Origin: Laetmonice hystrix
Lineage: Eukaryota
Direction of reading: 5' to 3'
Assembly: GCA_965235115.1 (NCBI GenBank)
Contig: OZ249436.1
Coordinates: 61,690,001-61,754,000 of the forward strand
DNA length: 64,000 nucleotides
The stretch's first letter is position 1; each line of letters starts with the position of its first letter. The translations under genes and the position numbers were made by a program. The notes beneath the pieces were generated by a model. That model saw only the letters and a list, made by a program, of their open reading frames with translations. It made no database searches and was not told the DNA's origin. Of this stretch, positions 37,844 through 46,941 are shown in pieces.

Positions 37844-40801
37844 GCTGTCATTGTAATAGTACATGTACTATCTTTGTGTGAGTTTTCAGTCTCATGCTTG
37901 AATATACAGATCAACACGACAACAGTTCAAGTATTATTAATGGTGATGTTTTCCGTACAAGGATGAACCATTCCTTCTTCTTGAATGTGTCGTTGTAAAT
38001 TCCATGATTTCTGTGAGATTTCTCAAGTACGGTATTCCTCCCATTTATTTTACTGTGCAAAAATCCAATACACTCAACTTGTCTACTCTTCCCAGGGTTT
38101 CCTGACCCATTCAAACCCAATTAGCTCAGCGGAAGTTGTGCCAGAGCATAAAAACTGAAAAGGGGATTCACCCTGCCGTATATATAGGCAGGGCGGGGGT
38201 CCAGAAAATCTTTATTCAAGAAATTAACATAAATAACACAGGCACCTTTTTTAAAATTGGCGAAAAGGAACCGTTATGGGGACATGGTGTACATGTCATG
38301 TGGAAAGTCAATTCATGTACATTGGTATGCCATTCATTCAAGAATGTGAAACAAAAAAATTGCTGGAATCTGGCAAATAGGCCATGCCATAGTAACGCTG
38401 CATGACAGAGCTAAGTTATTTGATTATTATTTCAAAAGGGGTTGAAAATTGTAAGTTGTCTAGGAAATATTCTGCTTGGTTTCAGTTTAAAAAGAGATTA
38501 TGCCAACAATACCGCCAAAAGGCAGTGGTAGAAAAAGAATTTTTAAGTCTTTGTGTCAACACCTGAAAAAAAATGCTTACATTCTAAAGATGGATAAGGA
38601 GAAAGCAACACTGTTGCCACTTTGGTTTACACTTTTTTCAAACTGAAAGTATTAATTTTAAAGAGTAAAACTACTTTTTATACTTTTTTCATACATTTTT
38701 CATGTGTTTTTCATTTTTTTTATACTTTTTTCTGGAAAATCGGGTAATTGAACGACATTGATGATGCGACTCTACAGGTGTGGTTTGCTAGTCTCCGAAT
38801 AAGAGTGGTGCGCGTTATGTTGAGTCGGTTTTTTTTGCTGAGCAGCACATAGAATACACATTTTAGGCTCAACTTTTCTCAACAATTGTATACATGACTC
38901 CTGAAAGCTTGGTATTGAGAAGCCTAAAATGAGAACAAATTACAAACCAGGGTTAATTCATGTACATGTATCTTCATTTTACTACTTTTTTCGACAATAA
39001 TTGAATTTTGATACTTTGTTCTTGAAACTGAAAGATTCTATACATTTTTGTTTGTCAAACCCAGAGTGATGGCACTGAAGTCTGGCCCTGGGGTTCATAT
39101 GTACACAAAAGAGTATGAATGACAGTGAAAAAAAAGAAAAAGGTATCAGACAAAAAAAAGTATATTTAAAAAATAAAAATATTTTGGAGCAGTAAACCAC
39201 TTACATATTGGCACAAGAGCTGATTGGCGGATTCTCTCTACATATTCAGGGTTCTTGCTTGAACAAATTCTGGCAACCCATGGACGTACATGATTAAATC
39301 AGAACAGAGCAAATCCTGTCCATGGGAGGGCCTCAAAGAATGTAGGCTATTTAAACATTCATGGAGGGTATTCACTACACAATCCATAATAAATTTGAGT
39401 TCTGTCAAAACGCATATAAGTAGGCCTATTCAACCTAAATGAACATTTCAGCAAAATGCAGGAAAAGGTAATTACCTGTTTAAAATGTACAAACTGACAA
39501 CACAAATAGGATTTTCTATGACCTCTGAATGTCAGGGGAACTATGCATGATTCCTTAGGCTATGCCGAGGTTTCCAAATTCCCCTCACTGGCTTGACTTG
39601 AGGTCTCGTCAGCAGCCCCCAAGCAACCAACGCCCTCTTGTCAGGGCTCACACAGTAATTGGCCTACTAATAGTAGCAATAACCCTGACATTAACAGTGT
39701 AAGGAGAGCAATAAATTCTTTTCTGTGGGCACACGTTTCGTTCTGTAAAGTTCTGTAATTGTAAAGTTCTTGCTAACAGAAAGGTCTTGGCCAAGTCAAG
39801 ACTTGGGTATATTTTTTTAATATTTATTCTGTCAGGAAAACGAAGTGCCTTACTTTCAGGCTTTTTCCTTTCTTCCTTCGTTTTTAACAACTTGATAAGT
39901 TGTGGAATTTTGCTTACACTCCAAAGGGAACTTCAAAGCACAAAGTTATTGTTCTGTGGTTTCCCTGATTGACTACCCTGGTAATGTCCCGCCCTGAGAC
40001 TGAGACTTTGACTGGGCCAGTGGGGGAGTCACAGGCGCACTGCAGTCAACTACAGCTGTAGGCCTACGACGTTGTCCAGGCAGAGGTACGTGTCGCTGTG
40101 CCTGTGACTGTGTGAGGCTGTGTGTGGTGGTTGGGGGGGGGGGGGGGGGGCACTAAAGAAGGAATCAGTACAAAACTGTGCAAACATACACAGGCTTAGA
40201 TTTGCTTTCACTAGGTCTGTCAATTCTGTTTCATTCAGGCCATTTTTATGATCATTCCTCGTTGGAAGCCAGCAGCGCCCTCTTCTGACTCTTGAGTGAC
40301 CTGACTTGAGTCTGTCACTCTGTGTTGACGGTGATGTGCTTTTCACTGTTGACCTATACTATAGGCTTCATTCGCAATACCGCAGGTTAAATCAAATACT
40401 AGGGTAAAAAAACACTACTGTCTGATTATGTTAGACATCATAATGGCTTCATTTATTGCAGACTAGTGTAGGAATAGCTTATTAATAGCCGTTGCTCTAA
40501 GCATCATAGATCCGTCCCTGACAGCGGATGGGCGATAATAGGGGAAACGAGCGCTTCGAAAAGTAAATAAACGTAAAATTCGAGCTAAAATACGCCCACC
40601 AGAGAAAATGACTATATTATCGAGGTCGTTTTAAGTGTTAATATTGGTTCTGATAACTTATTTATAAATTTGAACAATTTTCAGCTTCATAGGGCAAATT
40701 ATTGAAACGACCCTTTCTTGGGTGACACACCTATAAACATGTCATAGGACACCATTCATACCTAGCTTCCGGTATGTGTTAGTGGAGTTTGGACAGAGGA
40801 C

Positions 40802-40957
40802 ATGCGGCGTTTTCTGAGCCGCATTGGCCTGACTAGAGTACAGATTGTGGTGGGCATTGTCGTTGGAGTACTATCGGGTGTTTACATCTGGAAGAAACCA
40901 CTCGAGGAGTATCACAGCGGAGAGCGGAGCCGTGCAGAGAGTGAGCAGACCGGGTGA
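40802..40957 (+). CDS. PIGBOS1: PIGBOS1-like mitochondrial outer-membrane microprotein, 51 aa (below the ORF-track cutoff)
   Basis: MRRFLSRIGLTRVQIVVGIVVGVLSGVYIWKKPLEEYHSGERSRAESEQTG*. Aligns by eye with human PIGBOS1 ([29 protein letters not shown]): LT..Q......G...GVYI...P.E.Y followed by a charged tail. ETS-like cttccgg just upstream; AATAAA at 41133. Confidence 0.85.
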   Translation: MRRFLSRIGLTRVQIVVGIVVGVLSGVYIWKKPLEEYHSGERSRAESEQTG

Positions 40958-42041
40958 GGGCTGGTGGTGGTGGATGACTGCAGCCGGCCACCTATCACAT
41001 CACACACAGTCACAGTCCAGACTCAAGCCGTCAAGGGCAAGGCAGCAAGCCAGCAGGCAACTAAGTAAGACCACGACGTCTTGTAGCATGACCTTGAGTC
41101 GCCCATGTACCTTGAGTCGTTCACCCACCCTAAATAAAAACCATCTGACCTCTGGTGGATAATTCAAGAACCACAAGAAAGAGTAAAAAATGGGCTTTCA
41201 GATGACAACTTGTAATGGGTTGGTCTCAACCAATGCAGTGTTAATGTGGGTGGGCGACTCAAGGTATGTGGGCGGGGCGAATCGTAGCAAAGAACGATGT
41301 TCTTTGACTATAGCGTTGTCCCTAGCGTTTATCTAGCAGTTTAAATTTTAATATAGTTAAAATCTTGTATCTTCATTCGGGTGAGAGACTCCATGTTCCC
41401 CATGGGTGTATATCGAAATTAACCGCGGGTCGAAAACGGCAGCGCGCAAGTAAGGGTTAGTCGCTGGCGGAGCCGCCTGCATGCTGTGCCTGCTGGTCGC
41501 AAGGTAATTACAGGCAGCCGATTTCAATGCGCAGCTTTCGACCATGACCATGTCCCAGTATGTCAGACTGCATGTCCCAAGTGTACATTTCATTCTCCAG
41601 TCGAGAATTCTCCTTATAAATAAAAGTTTTTAGCAATTGATCATTTCATTGGTCGCAGTGTATTGTGACAAATTCCTGTTAATTTAAGTGCCAGAGATTT
41701 TTGCTATGTTTTGCGATCGGGCAAATTGGCATGTCCGTTGACTTGACCACCTGACTCGGGGTGAGTGGGACATGGAGTCTGGGACATGTATGGCACGCAT
41801 GGGACATGGAGTCTGACACTCCTTCACTCAGAGAGATGTTGGCTAAAAAGTAAAAATGCGTTGGGGATGGAATTTCTAAAAATAAAATTGAATGATACAG
41901 CATTACAGGCCAAATGTTATTATTGCATCAATAAAAAAAAATGTTAACTTAATATTGAAATGTGTGTTCTCTTTGACCTTGCAGTAATCTGCCAAACTTC
42001 ATCCCATTGGGAAAAGTCGATTGAGTCAGTGCATCACTGTC

Positions 42042-42242
42042 ATGTCTACAACACGACTTAAACTTGCCTGGAAGCAGGGAGCAGCCATGCTGCTGGCAGG
42101 AATTGGTAGTGTGATGTTGTACTATGGCGCTGTGAGGCCACGTCTCAAGTCTCAACGCAGGCATAGGCTACAGAAGGAAGTCCAAGACCTTTTGGAGAGT
42201 AAAGAACAGAAAATCAAACTACAAGACACAGGACAAAAGTGA
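42042..42242 (+). CDS. Unknown single-pass membrane microprotein, 66 aa
   Basis: MSTTRLKLAWKQGAAMLLAGIGSVMLYYGAVRPRLKSQRRHRLQKEVQDLLESKEQKIKLQDTGQK*. Clean acceptor ttgcag| at 41984, candidate non-coding first exon ending caag|gtaatt near 41503, and AATAAA near 42341. One TM segment followed by a basic then coiled-coil-like tail. Confidence 0.75.
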   Translation: MSTTRLKLAWKQGAAMLLAGIGSVMLYYGAVRPRLKSQRRHRLQKEVQDLLESKEQKIKLQDTGQK

Positions 42243-44371
42243 CAAAAAGGCTATGCTCTATCAGTCTATGACGTCCTGATTCAACTCCTATTTTTAGACT
42301 TTTATATAGGAAGATATTAGTCTAGTTCTTTTTTAAAGGGAATAAATAAATATGTTTGTATCTGGAAATGCAGTTTTCATGGTTTCACTTTCAGGCAATG
42401 AACCCATAAATTTCATTAGCTGTGCAAGTCAATGCCAGGCCAACTATTTTGTCGACAACCAGCCGTAGGACGACTACACATAAGACGACAGCTTCATAGC
42501 AACAACAGGCAACTGAGATGTTGAATTTCATTAGATTTCATGATTTCTGTCTGTATACATTTGTACATTTATTGATTTACGTAGTCTAAGGCCTTATCTA
42601 ACCTAACAGCCCATGTCTCCATTTTGGAGTCATTGAAATAAGGAATAATCGTGAATGGCTTTATCTTTGCATATTTCTACACATTCCATAATTGAAACTG
42701 CAGACACCTTCCATTCTGCAGTTACTGTTAAGACCTTTTATTCAAGATTTCACCAGACTCCTGTCTAATATAGAATTTTTGACAACTTAATTTTATAAGC
42801 TAACATCCTGAACCATACTTGCAGTTTAGGTTCACCAACTAAAGGTTTTTTAGTAAGCAGGGGTGGGGGCCGATTTGATCCTGCACTATGGCCCTCCCAG
42901 AATGAACGAGACTCGACTGTCCAGTATGTACTGAAGAATACAATGTACTTGAAGACTAAAGCCTGCTGGACACTTTCCCGATTTTGCCCAACTCTAGTCG
43001 GTAACCATGGTTCCCGACTCAAAGACTAAACCCCACCTTACACCTTCCTGATTTTGCGCAACTTGAGTCGGTGACCATGTTTCCCGACTGCAGTTGGAGC
43101 AAATCGTAGCCGATTCAAAAACCACGTGGCTCAGCAGCAGTTGACCAAAAATGGGACTTACCGGTACTGTATGCCTGGGGCCCGTCTTACTATGCCGGCG
43201 ACGTCGCCCATCAAAATGTCGCCAACATTAAAGCAATGGGGCACGTCGCCAGAACGGGCGACATATAACCTTATATGGGCCGGTGACGTCCCATTTGGCG
43301 ATATCACCGGCTTAGTAAGACGGGCCCCTGGTTCCCGACTTGCGCTGCATGGATACGGGAACTTGGGAGCTGATAATTCTGTCAGTGTATGGGGGTCAGT
43401 CGGGAGGGTGTACGGGGGTCAGTCGGGAGTTGGGCAAAGTCCTGACAATGTACGTATTCCCTCTAAATATTTATATTAATATATTTGTAAACAGGAACAT
43501 TGCAAAACATACGAAGGCAAGATTATTTTTACCACACAAATTAAACGATTTCAAAATCAAAAGTTTGTATAATGCACAACTTTTATTAATGACATTCATG
43601 AGGCCACAGAAGTATAGATATACACCAGAGGAGTGGAAGCCAACATATTCAGTCCAGATTTGTGATGACAACTTGACTGTAGGTTGATTGTTGTTTGATC
43701 ATCTTCAACCCGATTGCTGGCATTGTATCCTTTGGTACCAGGGCATTGTTTTGGGAACAATGACCAGTAAGACTGATTCCTAATATTGTCACTGTTGATG
43801 ACTGTTGTCTTGGAATCAATCAAAGTTGATGGCATCCACTGCTTCTCATCTCGACTGGGCTGAGTGATGAAGGAAAGGTCAGCTCTAGAGAAGAAAATGT
43901 GGAAATAACATTATGAGAAATTATTTTGGGAGAACTTTAGCAAAAATAATATTCGTAGATGTTTGTCATAAACAAAACATACCACATTAGTAGCAGAAGA
44001 AAGGATTGAGGTAAAGGAGACAAGGTCAAAATAGCAGAAACTAGGTATGGGAGGGGGTGTTCAAGGGAGGAAGCCCCCCCCCCCTCTCTTTGAAGGAAGC
44101 AGGGGAGGTCCGGCAGTGCTTGCAGTGAAAATAATGCAGGTGCGTGGTCAACAGCTCCCTAAGTGAAGTTTAGGAGAGCTGGGGAGGTCCGGACCTGTTT
44201 GGGATGCCACATCTTCAAATGCTAAAGGCCTGAGTTCAGCTATTATAAAAGTCTGGTTATCGGTACATGTACTGATTTTATTGGAAATACACACAATCTA
44301 CTATTACAGTTGCACAAGTCTCACCTTTACTATGACTTACCTGTACATAAGGTATGTGAACTCCTAGTTAG

Positions 44372-46807
44372 CTACTTTGCTGCTTCCGACTCATACTTGG
44401 TGCCATAGTATGGTAGATGTTGAAGGAGCAGCTTCCAGTCACATAACCAGACAAACGTTATGGCTGCTCCACCAGCGAAGAGGCCACCAGTTCCTAACCT
44501 GTATCGTAATGATAAAATTATTACGAGTAAGAATATGTGCAGATGGCAGGTTATTCATTATTATGAAGCCCCGGAGGCTGAAAGTCCCTATTATATCCTA
44601 TTAATCCCTGATATTTCGGATAGTTAGATTGTTTGGAATCTGTTTATAGAAGTGGCAGATAAGGAAGCAGTTTGTAGATTCCCATGCATTTGGGAAATTT
44701 GAATTTCGATGCAGTGCAATTTAAGCCAATCAGATTGCTCCGATTTTGCCCGCTCCGTAATACCACCAAAACCTCCACAGATTTCCATATCCGATCAATG
44801 CACGGTATGCAGCTCCTTGGTTATAGAGCTCGCTTTGCGAGCCGCTTCGCGGCTTGCTGCGCTCGCTATAATAATTATCAAAATGTCCCAATAAATCCTT
44901 CATCACATAGTTCTGCTGGCATCGTCAAAGACCCCTGCTTCAGCTTCACAAGGCACAAGCATGCAGCAAAGTCTAAGGCAAAGCCAGTGGAAGGTAAACC
45001 ATTTAGAATAAACTGGACTAGAGTTTAAAGACAGCAGTAGTGTTATTACTAACAAGAATATTGGGATCCCATTTATATTCTTGCTACTATAGTCCTGCAC
45101 CGTAAGTTGGGGACTAAAAGCTAAGTTTTTCTGACCTTGGGTGCTTCAAAACCTGCTCGCAGTGGTAATAATGAATCAATTCGCATGGAAATTGTTGCAA
45201 AAGAAACTAGAGATATTCGGCTTTTGTCCAGTATGAAAATTTAATAAATAGATTTAAGGGATTCTTTTTGGTATGGCCATTTAAAAACCACGAAAAAAGT
45301 ATAAAAAATCTGAAAACTTGTGACTTTTCTACCTAGCCGGTCTTGCCACGCAAAATCTGTAGCGACGACCTATACAAAAAAGACCCAGAATTATTCCCCA
45401 CCTCGTAAAATCTCAATAGATATCTTTCTTTTAGCGAGATTCCTTATAGTTTTGAATACAGCGAGCTTTGTTTGGAAATTTAAAAGTTCCCAAAACTTTG
45501 ATAATGACGTTAAATATCACAATAGACAGCCAGGCTCCAATCTAAGCTGTGTAGGATCAGAGGCCAACAGTGATGTTTACGGAGGTATTATAATGCTATA
45601 ATTTTCTGAGACTATCTACTGACCTTCGAAGTCTCTGCTTCTGTAGTATTTTAATCCATCTTTTAATAAAACGAGAGCTAGACAGCAAAATAGTGCAGTC
45701 TACGTTAGTCGTCACGACTGTGCCGCACGTCCTCTCTATGACGTCACAGCCACAGTTGACTTAACGAGGCATGCACTGGCTTTTTGTCTGTGAAACATTG
45801 TAATATTATGTATCAAAATACGTAGTTAACTATTCTATGATGTCACAAGTGACAATGAAAGCACAAACAGATCGAACCCAGGCTATAAAATTGTAGCCAA
45901 TGCAAATTATGAGGACGTTTTTGCCGGCCAGTCTCTGGCCCAAGCGATGACAACGAACGTGTTGACGGCTCTACCAGCCCAGGACACCCGGCCAGTACAC
46001 TGGTTTTTGAGCAGCAGCGCTCTAAAATAACACTTTCTAACTATAAAATAATGATTTATTTTTATAACATTTGGGTTTGCATAAATATTAAGACTAACTG
46101 CCCACACTATTATCACCTAGAACGATATAATAACATGTTCTGGGGTTTCAAGTGGGGGTTGAACTGGATGACCTCCCAAGTTCCCAATTTACGGTGCAGG
46201 ACTATAGTACACTACTGTAACAGTACTACTACTACCGTACCGGTACTTCTACTATCCTACCCAGGGTTCTCGCCAGCCATTTTCAGCGTAGTGGACCGCT
46301 ACGCTGTCTATCAGGGAAATTACGCTGTCTATTACAGTATTAGGCCGTTACGTTGTCTCTTGAACAGCGTAGCGGTAAAGCCTTGTCTAAAGTCAACAGA
46401 ACCCACAGGAATACTGGTAAAATGTCGTTCGAACATGTCGAAATCGTACTCATCTGACTGTAGGGCGGCCATATTTACCATTAATATATAGCCTAAATTA
46501 CCAGAACTGGGGGGGGGGGGGGTCGCCCCTCCCGTATACCTAACCAGTGGGCTCTGCTTGGTTTGACCACTACGCTGTCATAAATTTCTGGCGAGAACCC
46601 TGCTACCTACTTAGACTCACCATTTATTTAGTTCACCCAAAATAAAGAAGCCATTCCCATGTCATGATGATGAGTTGATAATAATCGTGTGTGAACCTGT
46701 TTAGACCGGAGAAATAGAGCAAGCACATGCAAATGGGATACCTACCATGCCTGAGCTATCTGTTTATGTTTAGGTCCAAGCAGAAGTGGTCCTACACGTA
46801 GAGGCAT
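44372..46807 (-). CDS. UQCR11: Cytochrome b-c1 complex subunit 10 (6.4 kDa), 62 aa, two coding exons plus a 3' UTR exon; absent from the ORF track
   Basis: Exon 46807-46746 (MPLRVGPLLLGPKHKQIAQA-TG|gtaggt) joins exon 44498-44372 (atacag|G-LGTGGLFAGGAAITFVWLCDWKLLLQHLPYYGTKYESEAAK*). Matches UQCR11 LGPRY.EL..NW and VW.TDWRLIL..VPY, with the intron inside the Trp codon. Further donor at 44340, acceptor at 43885, and AATAAA at 43587-43582. Confidence 0.95.
46262..46602. mobile_element. CAGGG-terminus MITE with 5-bp TSD (hAT5-like) in UQCR11 intron 1
   Basis: ctacc|cagggttctcgccag ... ctggcgagaaccctg|ctacc, plus a subterminal inverted cagcgtagtgg. Confidence 0.85.
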
Positions 46808-46941
46808 GTTTGACATAGGCCTACGAGAAAAATCTTGTCTGTCCTTGCTGTTCGGGTGACCTCGACCAGCTACCGGAAGTCCACTAGCCTTTCGGTGTCG
46901 CGGAAGGATTTCCACCCTCACTATCTTAGGAACCTATTTTA

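What the first reader, a model, noticed from the sequence alone, without database searches (positions are those of the whole stretch)
40802..46807. Compact cluster of three single-TM microprotein genes, two with known mitochondrial homologues
Seen: PIGBOS1-like (51 aa, +), an unknown 66-aa protein (+) and UQCR11 (62 aa, -) lie within 6 kb, with no large gene between them. Each has its own poly(A) signal. Established: PIGBOS1 is an outer-membrane microprotein linked to ER-stress signalling, and UQCR11 is a complex III subunit. ORF-length filters miss two of the three. Inference: a co-regulated mitochondrial microprotein neighbourhood, giving guilt-by-association for the unknown gene.
Basis: partly seen in the sequence, partly recalled or inferred. 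Interest (0 to 1): 0.7.

Follow-up and report, generated by a model that had tools for sequence, protein, structure and literature searches.

The report
Two small mitochondrial genes, not three
This stretch of an invertebrate genome holds two ordinary small genes for mitochondrial membrane proteins (a PIGBOS1 relative and complex III subunit UQCR11); the "unknown third gene" is a second open reading frame on the PIGBOS1-like messenger RNA, and whether it makes a protein is unproven.

Summary
All three ORFs exist at the stated coordinates and lengths (51, 66 and 62 aa). Two are real family members. The 51-aa ORF scores above Pfam's PIGBOS1 cut-off. The two-coding-exon minus-strand gene scores above the UQCR11 cut-off, aligns to solved complex III subunit 10, and is the only good copy in the 627-Mb genome.

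The picture of three separate genes fails. One public run (X4) behaves like RNA. It contains a contig joining 40806-41064 to 41985-42179 across a GT..AG intron. So the PIGBOS1-like ORF (exon 1) and the 66-aa ORF (exon 2) share one spliced transcript. UQCR11 also has a 3'UTR intron, so the AATAAA nearest each known gene's stop codon is intronic.

The 66-aa ORF has no detectable homologue in any search, and the RNA contig stops 20 codons before its stop. In its favour, it sits in the last exon, it has a transmembrane-plus-basic-tail architecture, and only one AUG lies in the 317 nt of mature RNA upstream of its own AUG (5.7 expected).

I read this as two convergent, independently promoted genes. 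I put about 0.35 on a true dicistronic microprotein mRNA. Nothing supports a co-regulated cluster beyond a generic ETS-type motif at both promoters. The scan's index shows only first-stage notes of 21 Nov 2026 on this same stretch.

The parts
40766..40774 (+). ETS-class motif CTTCCGGTA (reverse complement TACCGGAAG), 28-36 nt upstream of the PIGBOS1-like ATG; presumed core promoter
   Evidence: It is one of only two exact copies in the 64-kb window. The other is at the UQCR11 promoter. Promoter function is inferred.
40802..40957 (+). PIGBOS1-family ORF, 51 aa plus stop, complete within exon 1
   Evidence: Pfam PF23670 scores 35.8 bits against a cut-off of 27. The top atlas hits are PIGBOS1 clusters, and 9 of the 10 best hits share that family. 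It is single-copy in the genome. The one allelic difference inside it (40834 T>C) is synonymous (codon read).
40806..41064 (+). RNA-supported part of exon 1 of the plus-strand gene; donor CTAA|GTAAGA at 41064/41065
   Evidence: X4 contig record 25 (489 nt) and the joint 41064->41985 with GT..AG ends, which is absent from the three DNA runs. Sequence.
41065..41984 (+).
   Evidence: X4 depth is about 0-2 across 41200-41984.
41985..42179 (+). RNA-supported part of exon 2 (acceptor TTGCAG|TAATC); the exon probably runs on to about 42365
   Evidence: X4 contig record 25. Continuation beyond 42179 is not shown: X4 depth is 0 in 42200-42399.
42042..42242 (+). 66-aa downstream ORF (one hydrophobic segment, then a basic and then a Lys/Glu-rich tail); coding status unproven
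   Evidence: ORF. No homologue was found. Its first 46 codons lie in the RNA contig. The mature RNA upstream of it is AUG-poor.
42341..42346 (+). AATAAA 99 nt after the 66-aa ORF stop; probable poly(A) signal of the plus-strand gene
   Evidence: Its use is not shown by RNA.
43565..43884 (-). UQCR11 exon 3 (3'UTR only), acceptor TCTCTAG|AGCT; AATAAA at 43587-43582; the lower end is approximate
   Evidence: X4 joint 44341|43884 (CT..AC on the plus strand, which is GT..AG on the minus strand) and X4 contigs at 43648-43845. Sequence; poly(A) signal.
44341..44498 (-). UQCR11 exon 2: codons for residues 21(W, split)-62 and stop at 44374-44372; donor TACAG|GTAAGT at 44341/44340
   Evidence: Pfam PF08997 scores 37.2 bits against a cut-off of 24.5. 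It aligns to residues 20-54 of solved complex III subunit 10 chains, E = 6.5e-5. X4 RNA-like contig. Sequence.
44499..46745 (-). UQCR11 intron 1 (2247 nt), mostly high-copy repeats
   Evidence: Donor GCATG|GTAGGT and acceptor GATACAG|G keep the reading frame. X4 depth there is low and DNA depth is in the thousands. The joint itself was not listed.
46746..46816 (-). UQCR11 exon 1 coding part; in-frame ATGs at 46816 (65 aa) and 46807 (62 aa, better context, A at -3)
   Evidence: Sequence. X4 depth is about 3300 in 46600-46799. The allelic difference at 46754 is synonymous. Exon 1 alone gives no Pfam or PDB hit.
46871..46879 (-). Second exact CTTCCGGTA, 55-63 nt upstream of the UQCR11 ATG at 46816; presumed core promoter

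Best explanation
The 6-kb stretch contains two convergent, independently promoted nuclear genes for small single-pass mitochondrial membrane proteins, not three genes.

Gene 1 (plus strand) has two exons. Exon 1 holds the complete 51-codon PIGBOS1-family ORF. A 920-nt GT..AG intron follows. Exon 2 holds the 66-codon ORF.

Gene 2 (minus strand) is the genome's only good UQCR11 (complex III subunit 10) gene. It has three exons, and the last is pure 3'UTR.

Shown here: the family membership of both known proteins, the two RNA joints, and the absence of any detectable relative of the 66-aa ORF.

Inferred: each gene is driven by its own ETS/NRF-2-type promoter, and their adjacency is coincidental. 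The 66-aa ORF is, more likely than not (about 0.55-0.6), an untranslated or non-functional ORF in the 3' exon of the PIGBOS1-like mRNA, not a conserved protein gene. The stated confidence of 0.55 is for this whole reading, including the non-coding status of the 66-aa ORF. The two-gene structure alone I hold at about 0.85.
For: PIGBOS1-like ORF:
- PF23670 scores 35.8 bits against a cut-off of 27.
- The atlas hits agree.
- It is single-copy.

UQCR11:
- PF08997 scores 37.2 bits against a cut-off of 24.5.
- It aligns to solved subunit 10 chains.
- It is the only copy over the cut-off in the genome.

One transcript for two ORFs:
- The X4 contig 40806-41064|41985-42179 has GT..AG ends.
- That joint is absent from DNA runs X1-X3 of the same sample.

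UQCR11 3'UTR intron:
- X4 joint 44341|43884.
- Consensus splice sites.

The 66-aa ORF looks unconserved:
- The word-index search was blank.
- A full phmmer search of 1.84 billion representatives gave only repeat-protein artefacts.
- Pfam, NCBIfam and PDB gave nothing credible.
- The atlas recognition value is 2214, below the 2300 mark, and the top score is only 0.85.
- The RNA contig ends at 42179, and there is no X4 depth over the last 20 codons.

An ORF of at least 66 codons arises by chance in 3.4% of exon-2-like random sequences.
Against: Several features are unusual for a plain 3'UTR:
- The PIGBOS1-like stop lies 107 nt upstream of the exon junction, so the 66-aa ORF is the one that ends in the last exon.
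- Only 1 ATG lies in the 317 nt of mature RNA between the first AUG and the 66-aa AUG. Shuffles expect 5.7, with P(<=1) = 0.003; window tiles give P = 0.026. UQCR11's 3'UTR exon has 8 ATGs in 320 nt.
- Adding a transmembrane-like segment lowers the chance ORF rate to about 0.4-0.8%.

The negative homology searches are weak evidence, because the lineage is poorly sampled. Even UQCR11 and the PIGBOS1-like ORF found no word-sharing relatives. The tool itself warns that a hole in contig coverage proves nothing.
Confidence: 0.55

Rival explanations
1. This is a true dicistronic microprotein mRNA. The PIGBOS1-like ORF and the 66-aa ORF are both translated from one spliced transcript. The downstream ORF would be reached by leaky scanning past a cap-proximal first AUG, or by reinitiation after the 51-codon ORF. 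The 66-aa product would be a lineage-restricted, signal-anchored mitochondrial membrane protein that acts with, or is produced in step with, the PIGBOS1-like protein. This would be analogous to Drosophila sloth1/sloth2.
For: - Both ORFs lie on one RNA-like contig.
- The leader is AUG-depleted: 1 ATG against 5.7 expected, while ATG density is normal downstream of 42042.
- The single intervening ATG (40974) has a weak context, with T at -3.
- The ETS motif lies only 28-36 nt before the first AUG, which suggests a very short 5' leader (inference).
- The 66-aa ORF is the one that ends in the last exon, with an AATAAA 99 nt after its stop.
- Its architecture is a hydrophobic segment followed by RPRLKSQRRHR and a Lys/Glu-rich tail.
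- Precedent: sloth1/sloth2 are translated from one transcript by leaky scanning, and both act on complex III (PMC9681215).
Against: - No homologue was found in any search.
- The two ORFs show no similarity to each other.
- The first AUG has an adequate context, with G at -3.
- The ORF starting at 40974 overlaps the 66-aa start.
- The RNA contig does not cover the last 20 codons.
- The atlas recognition value is below the usual mark.
- The codon-usage score does not discriminate; even UQCR11 scores at the 68th percentile of null ORFs.
Confidence: 0.35
2. This is the first reader's model: three independent microprotein genes, each with its own promoter and poly(A) site, forming a co-regulated mitochondrial neighbourhood.
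For: All three ORFs lie within 6 kb with no large gene between them. The same 9-mer, CTTCCGGTA, sits upstream of the PIGBOS1-like and UQCR11 ORFs. All three regions are present in the same RNA-like run.
Against: - The spliced contig joins the PIGBOS1-like and 66-aa ORFs.
- The intron between them has essentially no RNA depth, so there is no sign of a separate promoter for the 66-aa ORF.
- No ETS motif lies upstream of the 66-aa ORF.
- UQCR11 is convergent on the other strand.
- The poly(A) signals nearest the two known stop codons are intronic.
- By rough estimate, two mitochondrial genes being neighbours is expected by chance at a rate of several percent per gene.
Confidence: 0.05
3. Exon 2 and its intron serve regulation, not coding. 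A stop codon 107 nt upstream of an exon junction could make the spliced isoform a target of nonsense-mediated decay. A minor unspliced isoform ending at the AATAAA at 41133 would then be the productive PIGBOS1-like mRNA. This is a sub-case of the non-coding reading, not an addition to it.
For: The stop-to-junction distance is 107 nt. An AATAAA lies 69 nt into the intron. There is some extra X4 depth in 41000-41199 beyond what the spliced contig explains.
Against: The spliced contig has high depth (about 520) and runs through the junction without a break, so the spliced form looks dominant. The extra depth coincides with a repeat that has high DNA depth. Junction-dependent decay is weak or absent in several invertebrates (my own knowledge).
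Confidence: 0.1

Closest known systems
PIGBOS1 (human 54-aa mitochondrial outer-membrane microprotein; Pfam PF23670)
   Same: It scores above the family cut-off. The size is similar (51 against 54 aa). A single N-proximal hydrophobic segment is followed by a charged tail, as described for human PIGBOS, whose transmembrane region spans residues 7-29 (PMC6814811). A gene of the family of its human partner CLCC1 (PF05934) exists elsewhere in this genome.
   Different: It is not opposite a PIGB gene; all GT22-family hits are on other contigs. In human the whole ORF lies in the second and last exon (PMC6814811). Here it lies in the first exon and is followed by an intron and a further ORF-bearing exon. 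Localisation and function are untested.
UQCR11 / cytochrome b-c1 complex subunit 10 (6.4-kDa protein; Pfam PF08997)
   Same: It scores above the family cut-off and aligns to residues 20-54 of solved chains such as 1sqp_K and 7o37_K. It is the single good copy in the genome. RNA-like depth over it is high.
   Different: The N-terminus is slightly longer (62 or 65 aa against 56). Exon 1 is too short and divergent to score alone. It has a 3'UTR intron.
sloth1/sloth2 (SMIM4/UQCC5 and C12orf73/UQCC6) dicistronic smORF transcript of Drosophila
   Same: Two small single-transmembrane ORFs lie on one transcript, with the upstream one a mitochondrial microprotein. Leaky scanning is the proposed route to the second ORF (PMC9681215). 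Here the RNA upstream of the second ORF is AUG-poor.
   Different: The sloth ORFs are paralogues, conserved across eukaryotes, and shown to be translated. Here the second ORF has no relative and no similarity to the first. It is separated from the first ORF by 164 nt of mature RNA and an intron, and it has no translation evidence. No sequence membership in either sloth family was detected.
Downstream ORFs (dORFs) in 3'UTRs
   Same: It is an ATG ORF lying 3' of an annotated-type coding ORF on the same mRNA.
   Different: It is longer than the upstream ORF and has the membrane-protein architecture of a microprotein. Whether it is translated is unknown.

Membership tests
PIGBOS1 family (PF23670) | Profile score above Pfam's gathering cut-off | tested here: met
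   35.8 bits against a cut-off of 27; residues 10-49 match profile positions 5-44 of 54. The genome scan gives 34.2 bits.
PIGBOS1 family (PF23670) | About 50-60 aa with one N-proximal transmembrane segment and a charged C-terminal tail | tested here: met
   51 aa; the most hydrophobic 19-mer (Kyte-Doolittle 1.85) starts at residue 8; the tail is KKPLEEYHSGERSRAESEQTG. Compare the human layout in PMC6814811.
PIGBOS1 family (PF23670) | Mitochondrial outer-membrane location and CLCC1 binding | not testable with these tools
   Only the presence of a CLCC1-family (PF05934) gene on contig C2 was shown.
PIGBOS1 family (PF23670) | Head-to-head arrangement with PIGB (the feature behind the gene's name, not a protein-family feature) | tested here: not met
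   All 17 GT22-family (PF03901) exon hits lie on contigs C2, C10, C13 and C18, and none on C1.
UQCR11 (PF08997) | Profile score above the gathering cut-off, and alignment to solved complex III subunit 10 | tested here: met
   37.2 bits against a cut-off of 24.5. 1sqp_K gives E = 6.5e-5 over chain residues 20-54.
UQCR11 (PF08997) | Complete N-terminal part joined in frame | tested here: inconclusive
   The donor and acceptor keep the frame and give 62 aa, and RNA-like depth covers exon 1. However, the joint was not listed, and exon 1 alone gives no hit.
Dicistronic smORF mRNA (sloth1/2-like) | Both ORFs on one mature transcript | tested here: inconclusive
   One contig covers ORF 1 from its fifth base and the first 46 of the 66 codons of ORF 2. 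The last 20 codons and the stop are not covered.
Dicistronic smORF mRNA (sloth1/2-like) | Both ORFs conserved in other species | tested here: not met
   ORF 1 belongs to a widespread family. ORF 2 has no relative. Sampling of the lineage is poor.
Dicistronic smORF mRNA (sloth1/2-like) | Sequence features that let ribosomes reach the second AUG | tested here: met
   There is 1 ATG in 317 nt against 5.7 expected, P = 0.003 by shuffles and 0.026 by window tiles. The intervening ATG has T at -3. The first AUG's own context is adequate, which argues the other way.
Dicistronic smORF mRNA (sloth1/2-like) | Translation of the second ORF | not testable with these tools
   No ribosome profiling or proteomics is available. 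Only one RNA-like run was found.
Co-regulated gene cluster | A shared transcription unit or shared/bidirectional promoter for all members | tested here: not met
   UQCR11 is convergent to the plus-strand gene, and their 3' ends lie about 1.2 kb apart. The two promoters share only an ETS-type 9-mer.

The most novel reading that the evidence does not exclude
In this invertebrate the ancient PIGBOS1 microprotein is the first cistron of a spliced dicistronic mRNA. The second cistron would encode a previously unseen 66-aa single-pass membrane protein. It would be reached by leaky scanning through an AUG-depleted leader and would act with PIGBOS1 at the mitochondrial membrane.
Probability: 0.35. Interest if true: 0.6.

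Novelty: new member of a known kind. Interest (0 to 1): 0.35.

Why it matters
As it stands, the locus yields two routine annotations that length filters would miss: a PIGBOS1-family gene and UQCR11, both with corrected exon structures. It also shows that poly(A) hexamers read from raw sequence can lie in introns.

If the downstream ORF proves to be translated, it would be a second animal example of two membrane microproteins made from one mRNA. It would also give a concrete partner candidate for PIGBOS1, whose molecular role is still thinly understood. A single ribosome-profiling or proteomics experiment would settle this.

Tried and rejected
- **Homology for the 66-aa ORF.** The word-index search was blank. 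The full phmmer search gave four hits, all long tandem-repeat proteins with 5-9 stretches, and I rejected them. Pfam gave only sub-threshold noise: E2_bind, PEX14-like and NS4B. NCBIfam gave noise. The PDB hits were a 14-residue word in designed TIM barrels, which I rejected. The atlas lead to DUF4748, COX6C, MITRAC7 and UQCC3-type microproteins scored only 0.79-0.85 with low shared features, and Pfam did not reproduce it, so it stays an unverified lead.
- **Other look-ups.** Exact-sequence look-ups of both plus-strand ORFs found nothing on record. Scans of JGI metagenome contigs with both ORFs found no relatives. Word-index searches with the PIGBOS1-like ORF and with UQCR11 exon 2 were both blank, so synteny in relatives could not be tested.
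- **Paralogy of the two plus-strand ORFs.** BLASTP found no alignment.
- **Complex prediction of the two plus-strand products.** No verdict (score 0.02). This is not evidence either way.
- **Codon-usage score trained on the window's long exons.** Uninformative: the 66-aa ORF is at the 89th percentile, the PIGBOS1-like ORF at the 85th and UQCR11 at the 68th percentile of null ORFs.
- **Allelic variation.** There are no differences across 41791-42438, but also none in the adjacent intron piece 41237-41600, so this is not a sign of constraint on the ORF.
- **The 30 loose letters at the 5' end of the RNA contig.** I tested them as an upstream or trans-spliced exon. They match once, on another chromosome (C21), with no GT donor after them and no AG before 40806. 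I treat them as an assembly or library chimera.
- **A splice donor at 42180 as the reason the contig ends there.** The sequence GAA|GTCCAA is a poor donor, so I rejected this.
- **Rfam families and internal repeats in 39.5-48 kb.** None found.
Full report
**What is in the sequence.** The window is a piece of a 627-Mb, 35-contig animal assembly (C1:61690001-61754000). Another note of this scan mentions an innexin in the same genome, which suggests an invertebrate.

- A 51-aa ORF at 40802-40957 on the plus strand.
- A 66-aa ATG ORF at 42042-42242 on the plus strand.
- A minus-strand UQCR11 reading of 62 aa. It starts at the ATG at 46807, and an in-frame ATG at 46816 would give 65 aa. Its donor is GCATG|GTAGGT at 46746/46745 and its acceptor is GATACAG|G at 44499/44498. 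The W codon is split across the junction, and the stop is at 44374-44372.

**The two known families hold up.**
- The 51-aa ORF scores 35.8 bits on Pfam PF23670 (PIGBOS1-like; cut-off 27).
- The protein-atlas search independently puts PIGBOS1 clusters first. It shares 182-183 features, and 9 of the 10 best hits belong to the same family.
- It is the only PIGBOS1-family match in the genome.
- UQCR11 exon 2 scores 37.2 bits on PF08997 (cut-off 24.5). It aligns to residues 20-54 of solved complex III subunit 10 chains, with 1sqp_K at E = 6.5e-5.
- The genome has no other copy over the cut-off. A 21.9-bit hit on C7 carries an internal TGA.
- Exon 1 of UQCR11 is too short to score alone. It rests on frame-preserving consensus splice sites and on RNA-like coverage.

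**RNA evidence changes the gene count.** The run search found four runs from one sample and one study.
- Three runs (X1-X3) cover the stretch evenly at about 30-60x in unique DNA and are DNA.
- The fourth (X4, 59 million letters) covers only exon-like pieces and carries GT..AG joints that the DNA runs lack. It therefore behaves as RNA, although its kind is not on record.
- Its 489-nt contig lies on 40806-41064 and then on 41985-42179, skipping 920 nt with GT..AG ends. The donor is CTAA|GTAAGA and the acceptor is TTGCAG|TAATC. X4 depth across the skipped part is about 0-2.
- So the PIGBOS1-like ORF (complete in exon 1, stop at 40955-40957) and the 66-aa ORF (in exon 2) belong to one spliced transcript. 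The AATAAA at 41133 is intronic.
- A second X4 joint, 44341|43884 (CT..AC on the plus strand), shows that UQCR11 has a 456-nt intron beginning 31 nt after its stop. The donor is TACAG|GTAAGT and the acceptor is TCTCTAG|A.
- A 3'UTR exon runs down to about 43565, with an AATAAA at 43587. The AATAAA at 44282 is therefore intronic as well.
- The locus is thus two convergent transcription units, with 3' ends about 1.2 kb apart.

**Limits of that RNA evidence.**
- The contig stops at 42179, which is codon 46 of the 66-aa ORF, with no loose letters. X4 shows zero depth in 42200-42399.
- The tool warns that a hole proves nothing. I could not explain the stop: GAA|GTCCAA is a poor splice donor, and no poly(A) signal precedes it.
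- At the other end, the contig carries 30 letters that do not match the genome before 40806, so the ATG at 40802 itself is not in the matched part.
- Those 30 letters occur exactly once in the genome, on contig C21. No GT follows them there, and no AG precedes 40806.
- Thirty letters is k-1 for a 31-mer assembly graph. I read this as a chimeric tip that replaced a very short true 5' end. That fits a transcription start only a few tens of bases upstream (inference).

**The 66-aa ORF.** No relative was found anywhere:
- The word-index search was blank.
- A full phmmer scan of 1.84 billion representatives gave four hits, all long tandem-repeat proteins matched in 5-9 stretches.
- Pfam, NCBIfam and PDB gave only noise.
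- JGI metagenome contigs gave nothing, and the exact look-up gave nothing.
- The atlas gave only leads at 0.79-0.85 to various small mitochondrial membrane proteins. Its recognition value was 2214, below the 2300 mark.

These negatives are weakened by poor sampling of the lineage. The bona fide PIGBOS1-like and UQCR11 sequences also found no word-sharing relatives.

Codon usage does not discriminate. Allelic variation is uninformative, because the neighbouring intron is equally invariant.

**What speaks for translation of the 66-aa ORF.**
- It is on the sense strand of a mature RNA and is the ORF that ends in the last exon. The PIGBOS1-like stop lies 107 nt before the exon junction.
- An ORF of at least 66 codons arises in 3.4% of exon-2-like random sequences, and in 0.36% with a comparably hydrophobic 19-mer. 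The real window, however, has 23 such hydrophobic ORFs among 98 ORFs of at least 60 aa.
- The mature RNA between the first AUG and the 66-aa AUG holds a single ATG in 317 nt, at 40974, with T at -3. Shuffles expect 5.7, with P(<=1) = 0.003; window tiles give P = 0.026.
- Downstream of 42042 the ATG density is normal, and UQCR11's 3'UTR exon has 8 ATGs in 320 nt.
- AUG depletion of this kind is what a leaky-scanning leader would show, as proposed for Drosophila sloth1/sloth2 (PMC9681215).
- This check was made after the fact, and part of the depleted region is the PIGBOS1-like coding sequence itself.
- Weighing all of this, I put about 0.35 on a real second cistron.

**The co-regulated neighbourhood idea.**
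- The only shared feature is the 9-mer CTTCCGGTA (reverse complement TACCGGAAG, an ETS-class site).
- Its only two exact copies in the window sit 28-36 nt before the PIGBOS1-like ATG and 55-63 nt before the UQCR11 ATG, each on the coding strand. The 7-mer core is not enriched in the window.
- From established knowledge, ETS/GABP (NRF-2) sites are among the commonest core-promoter motifs of housekeeping and OXPHOS genes. They mark each gene's own promoter and do not point to a cluster-level mechanism.
- No such site lies upstream of the 66-aa ORF.
- PIGB is not nearby, so the vertebrate head-to-head arrangement is not kept.
- In human the PIGBOS ORF lies in the last of two exons (PMC6814811), unlike here.
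- Conserved linkage with UQCR11 could not be tested. From my own knowledge, the human orthologues are on different chromosomes.
- The flanks are gene-poor: no ORF of at least 70 aa with an obvious family lies in 29-40.8 kb, and an ENaC/ASIC-like exon starts at 50.4 kb.
- No Rfam family and no internal repeat occurs in 39.5-48 kb.

**Verdict.** The ORFs and the two family assignments are right. The "three genes with their own poly(A) signals" is wrong. The locus is two ordinary small mitochondrial genes plus a candidate second cistron that needs translation or conservation evidence. A complex prediction for the two plus-strand products returned no verdict and is not used.

Noticed in passing
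window 40806 (5' end of X4 contig); L003:1501-1530 = G000:C21:1818929-1818958: The RNA-like contig carries 30 letters before 40806 that match exactly once in the genome, on another chromosome. There is no GT donor after them there. This is probably a chimeric assembly tip, but a real chimeric RNA is not excluded.
   Followed up: partly
window 42179-42399: The RNA-like contig ends abruptly at 42179, inside the 66-aa ORF. It has no poly(A) letters and no good splice donor, and X4 depth is zero up to 42399, although the DNA runs cover this part in one clean contig. This is unexplained.
   Followed up: partly
window 42400-43400 and 44600-46600: High-copy repeats fill the space between the two genes and most of UQCR11 intron 1. 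DNA word depth is in the thousands to about 40,000, against about 30-60 for unique DNA. Some copies are present in the RNA-like run with flanks from elsewhere.
   Followed up: no
window 40974-41064 + 41985-42062: A 55-codon ATG ORF with a weak context spans the exon junction of the spliced RNA. It ends 20 nt after the 66-aa ORF's start, and it is the only ATG between the two ORFs.
   Followed up: partly
G000:C7:8187063-8187149 (-): A second, sub-threshold UQCR11-like match (21.9 bits) has an internal TGA. It may be a decayed copy.
   Followed up: no
G000:C2:24139586-24141084 (+): Two exon-sized matches to the CLCC1 family (PF05934) score just above its cut-off. The family of PIGBOS's human partner is therefore present in this genome.
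   Followed up: no
window 46509-46522 (-): A run of about 14 C on the minus strand lies inside UQCR11 intron 1. DNA contigs of all three runs break next to it.
   Followed up: no
window 40965-40991: A cluster of allelic differences (two substitutions and three small insertions) sits just after the PIGBOS1-like stop. The single difference inside each known coding sequence (40834 and 46754) is synonymous.
   Followed up: partly
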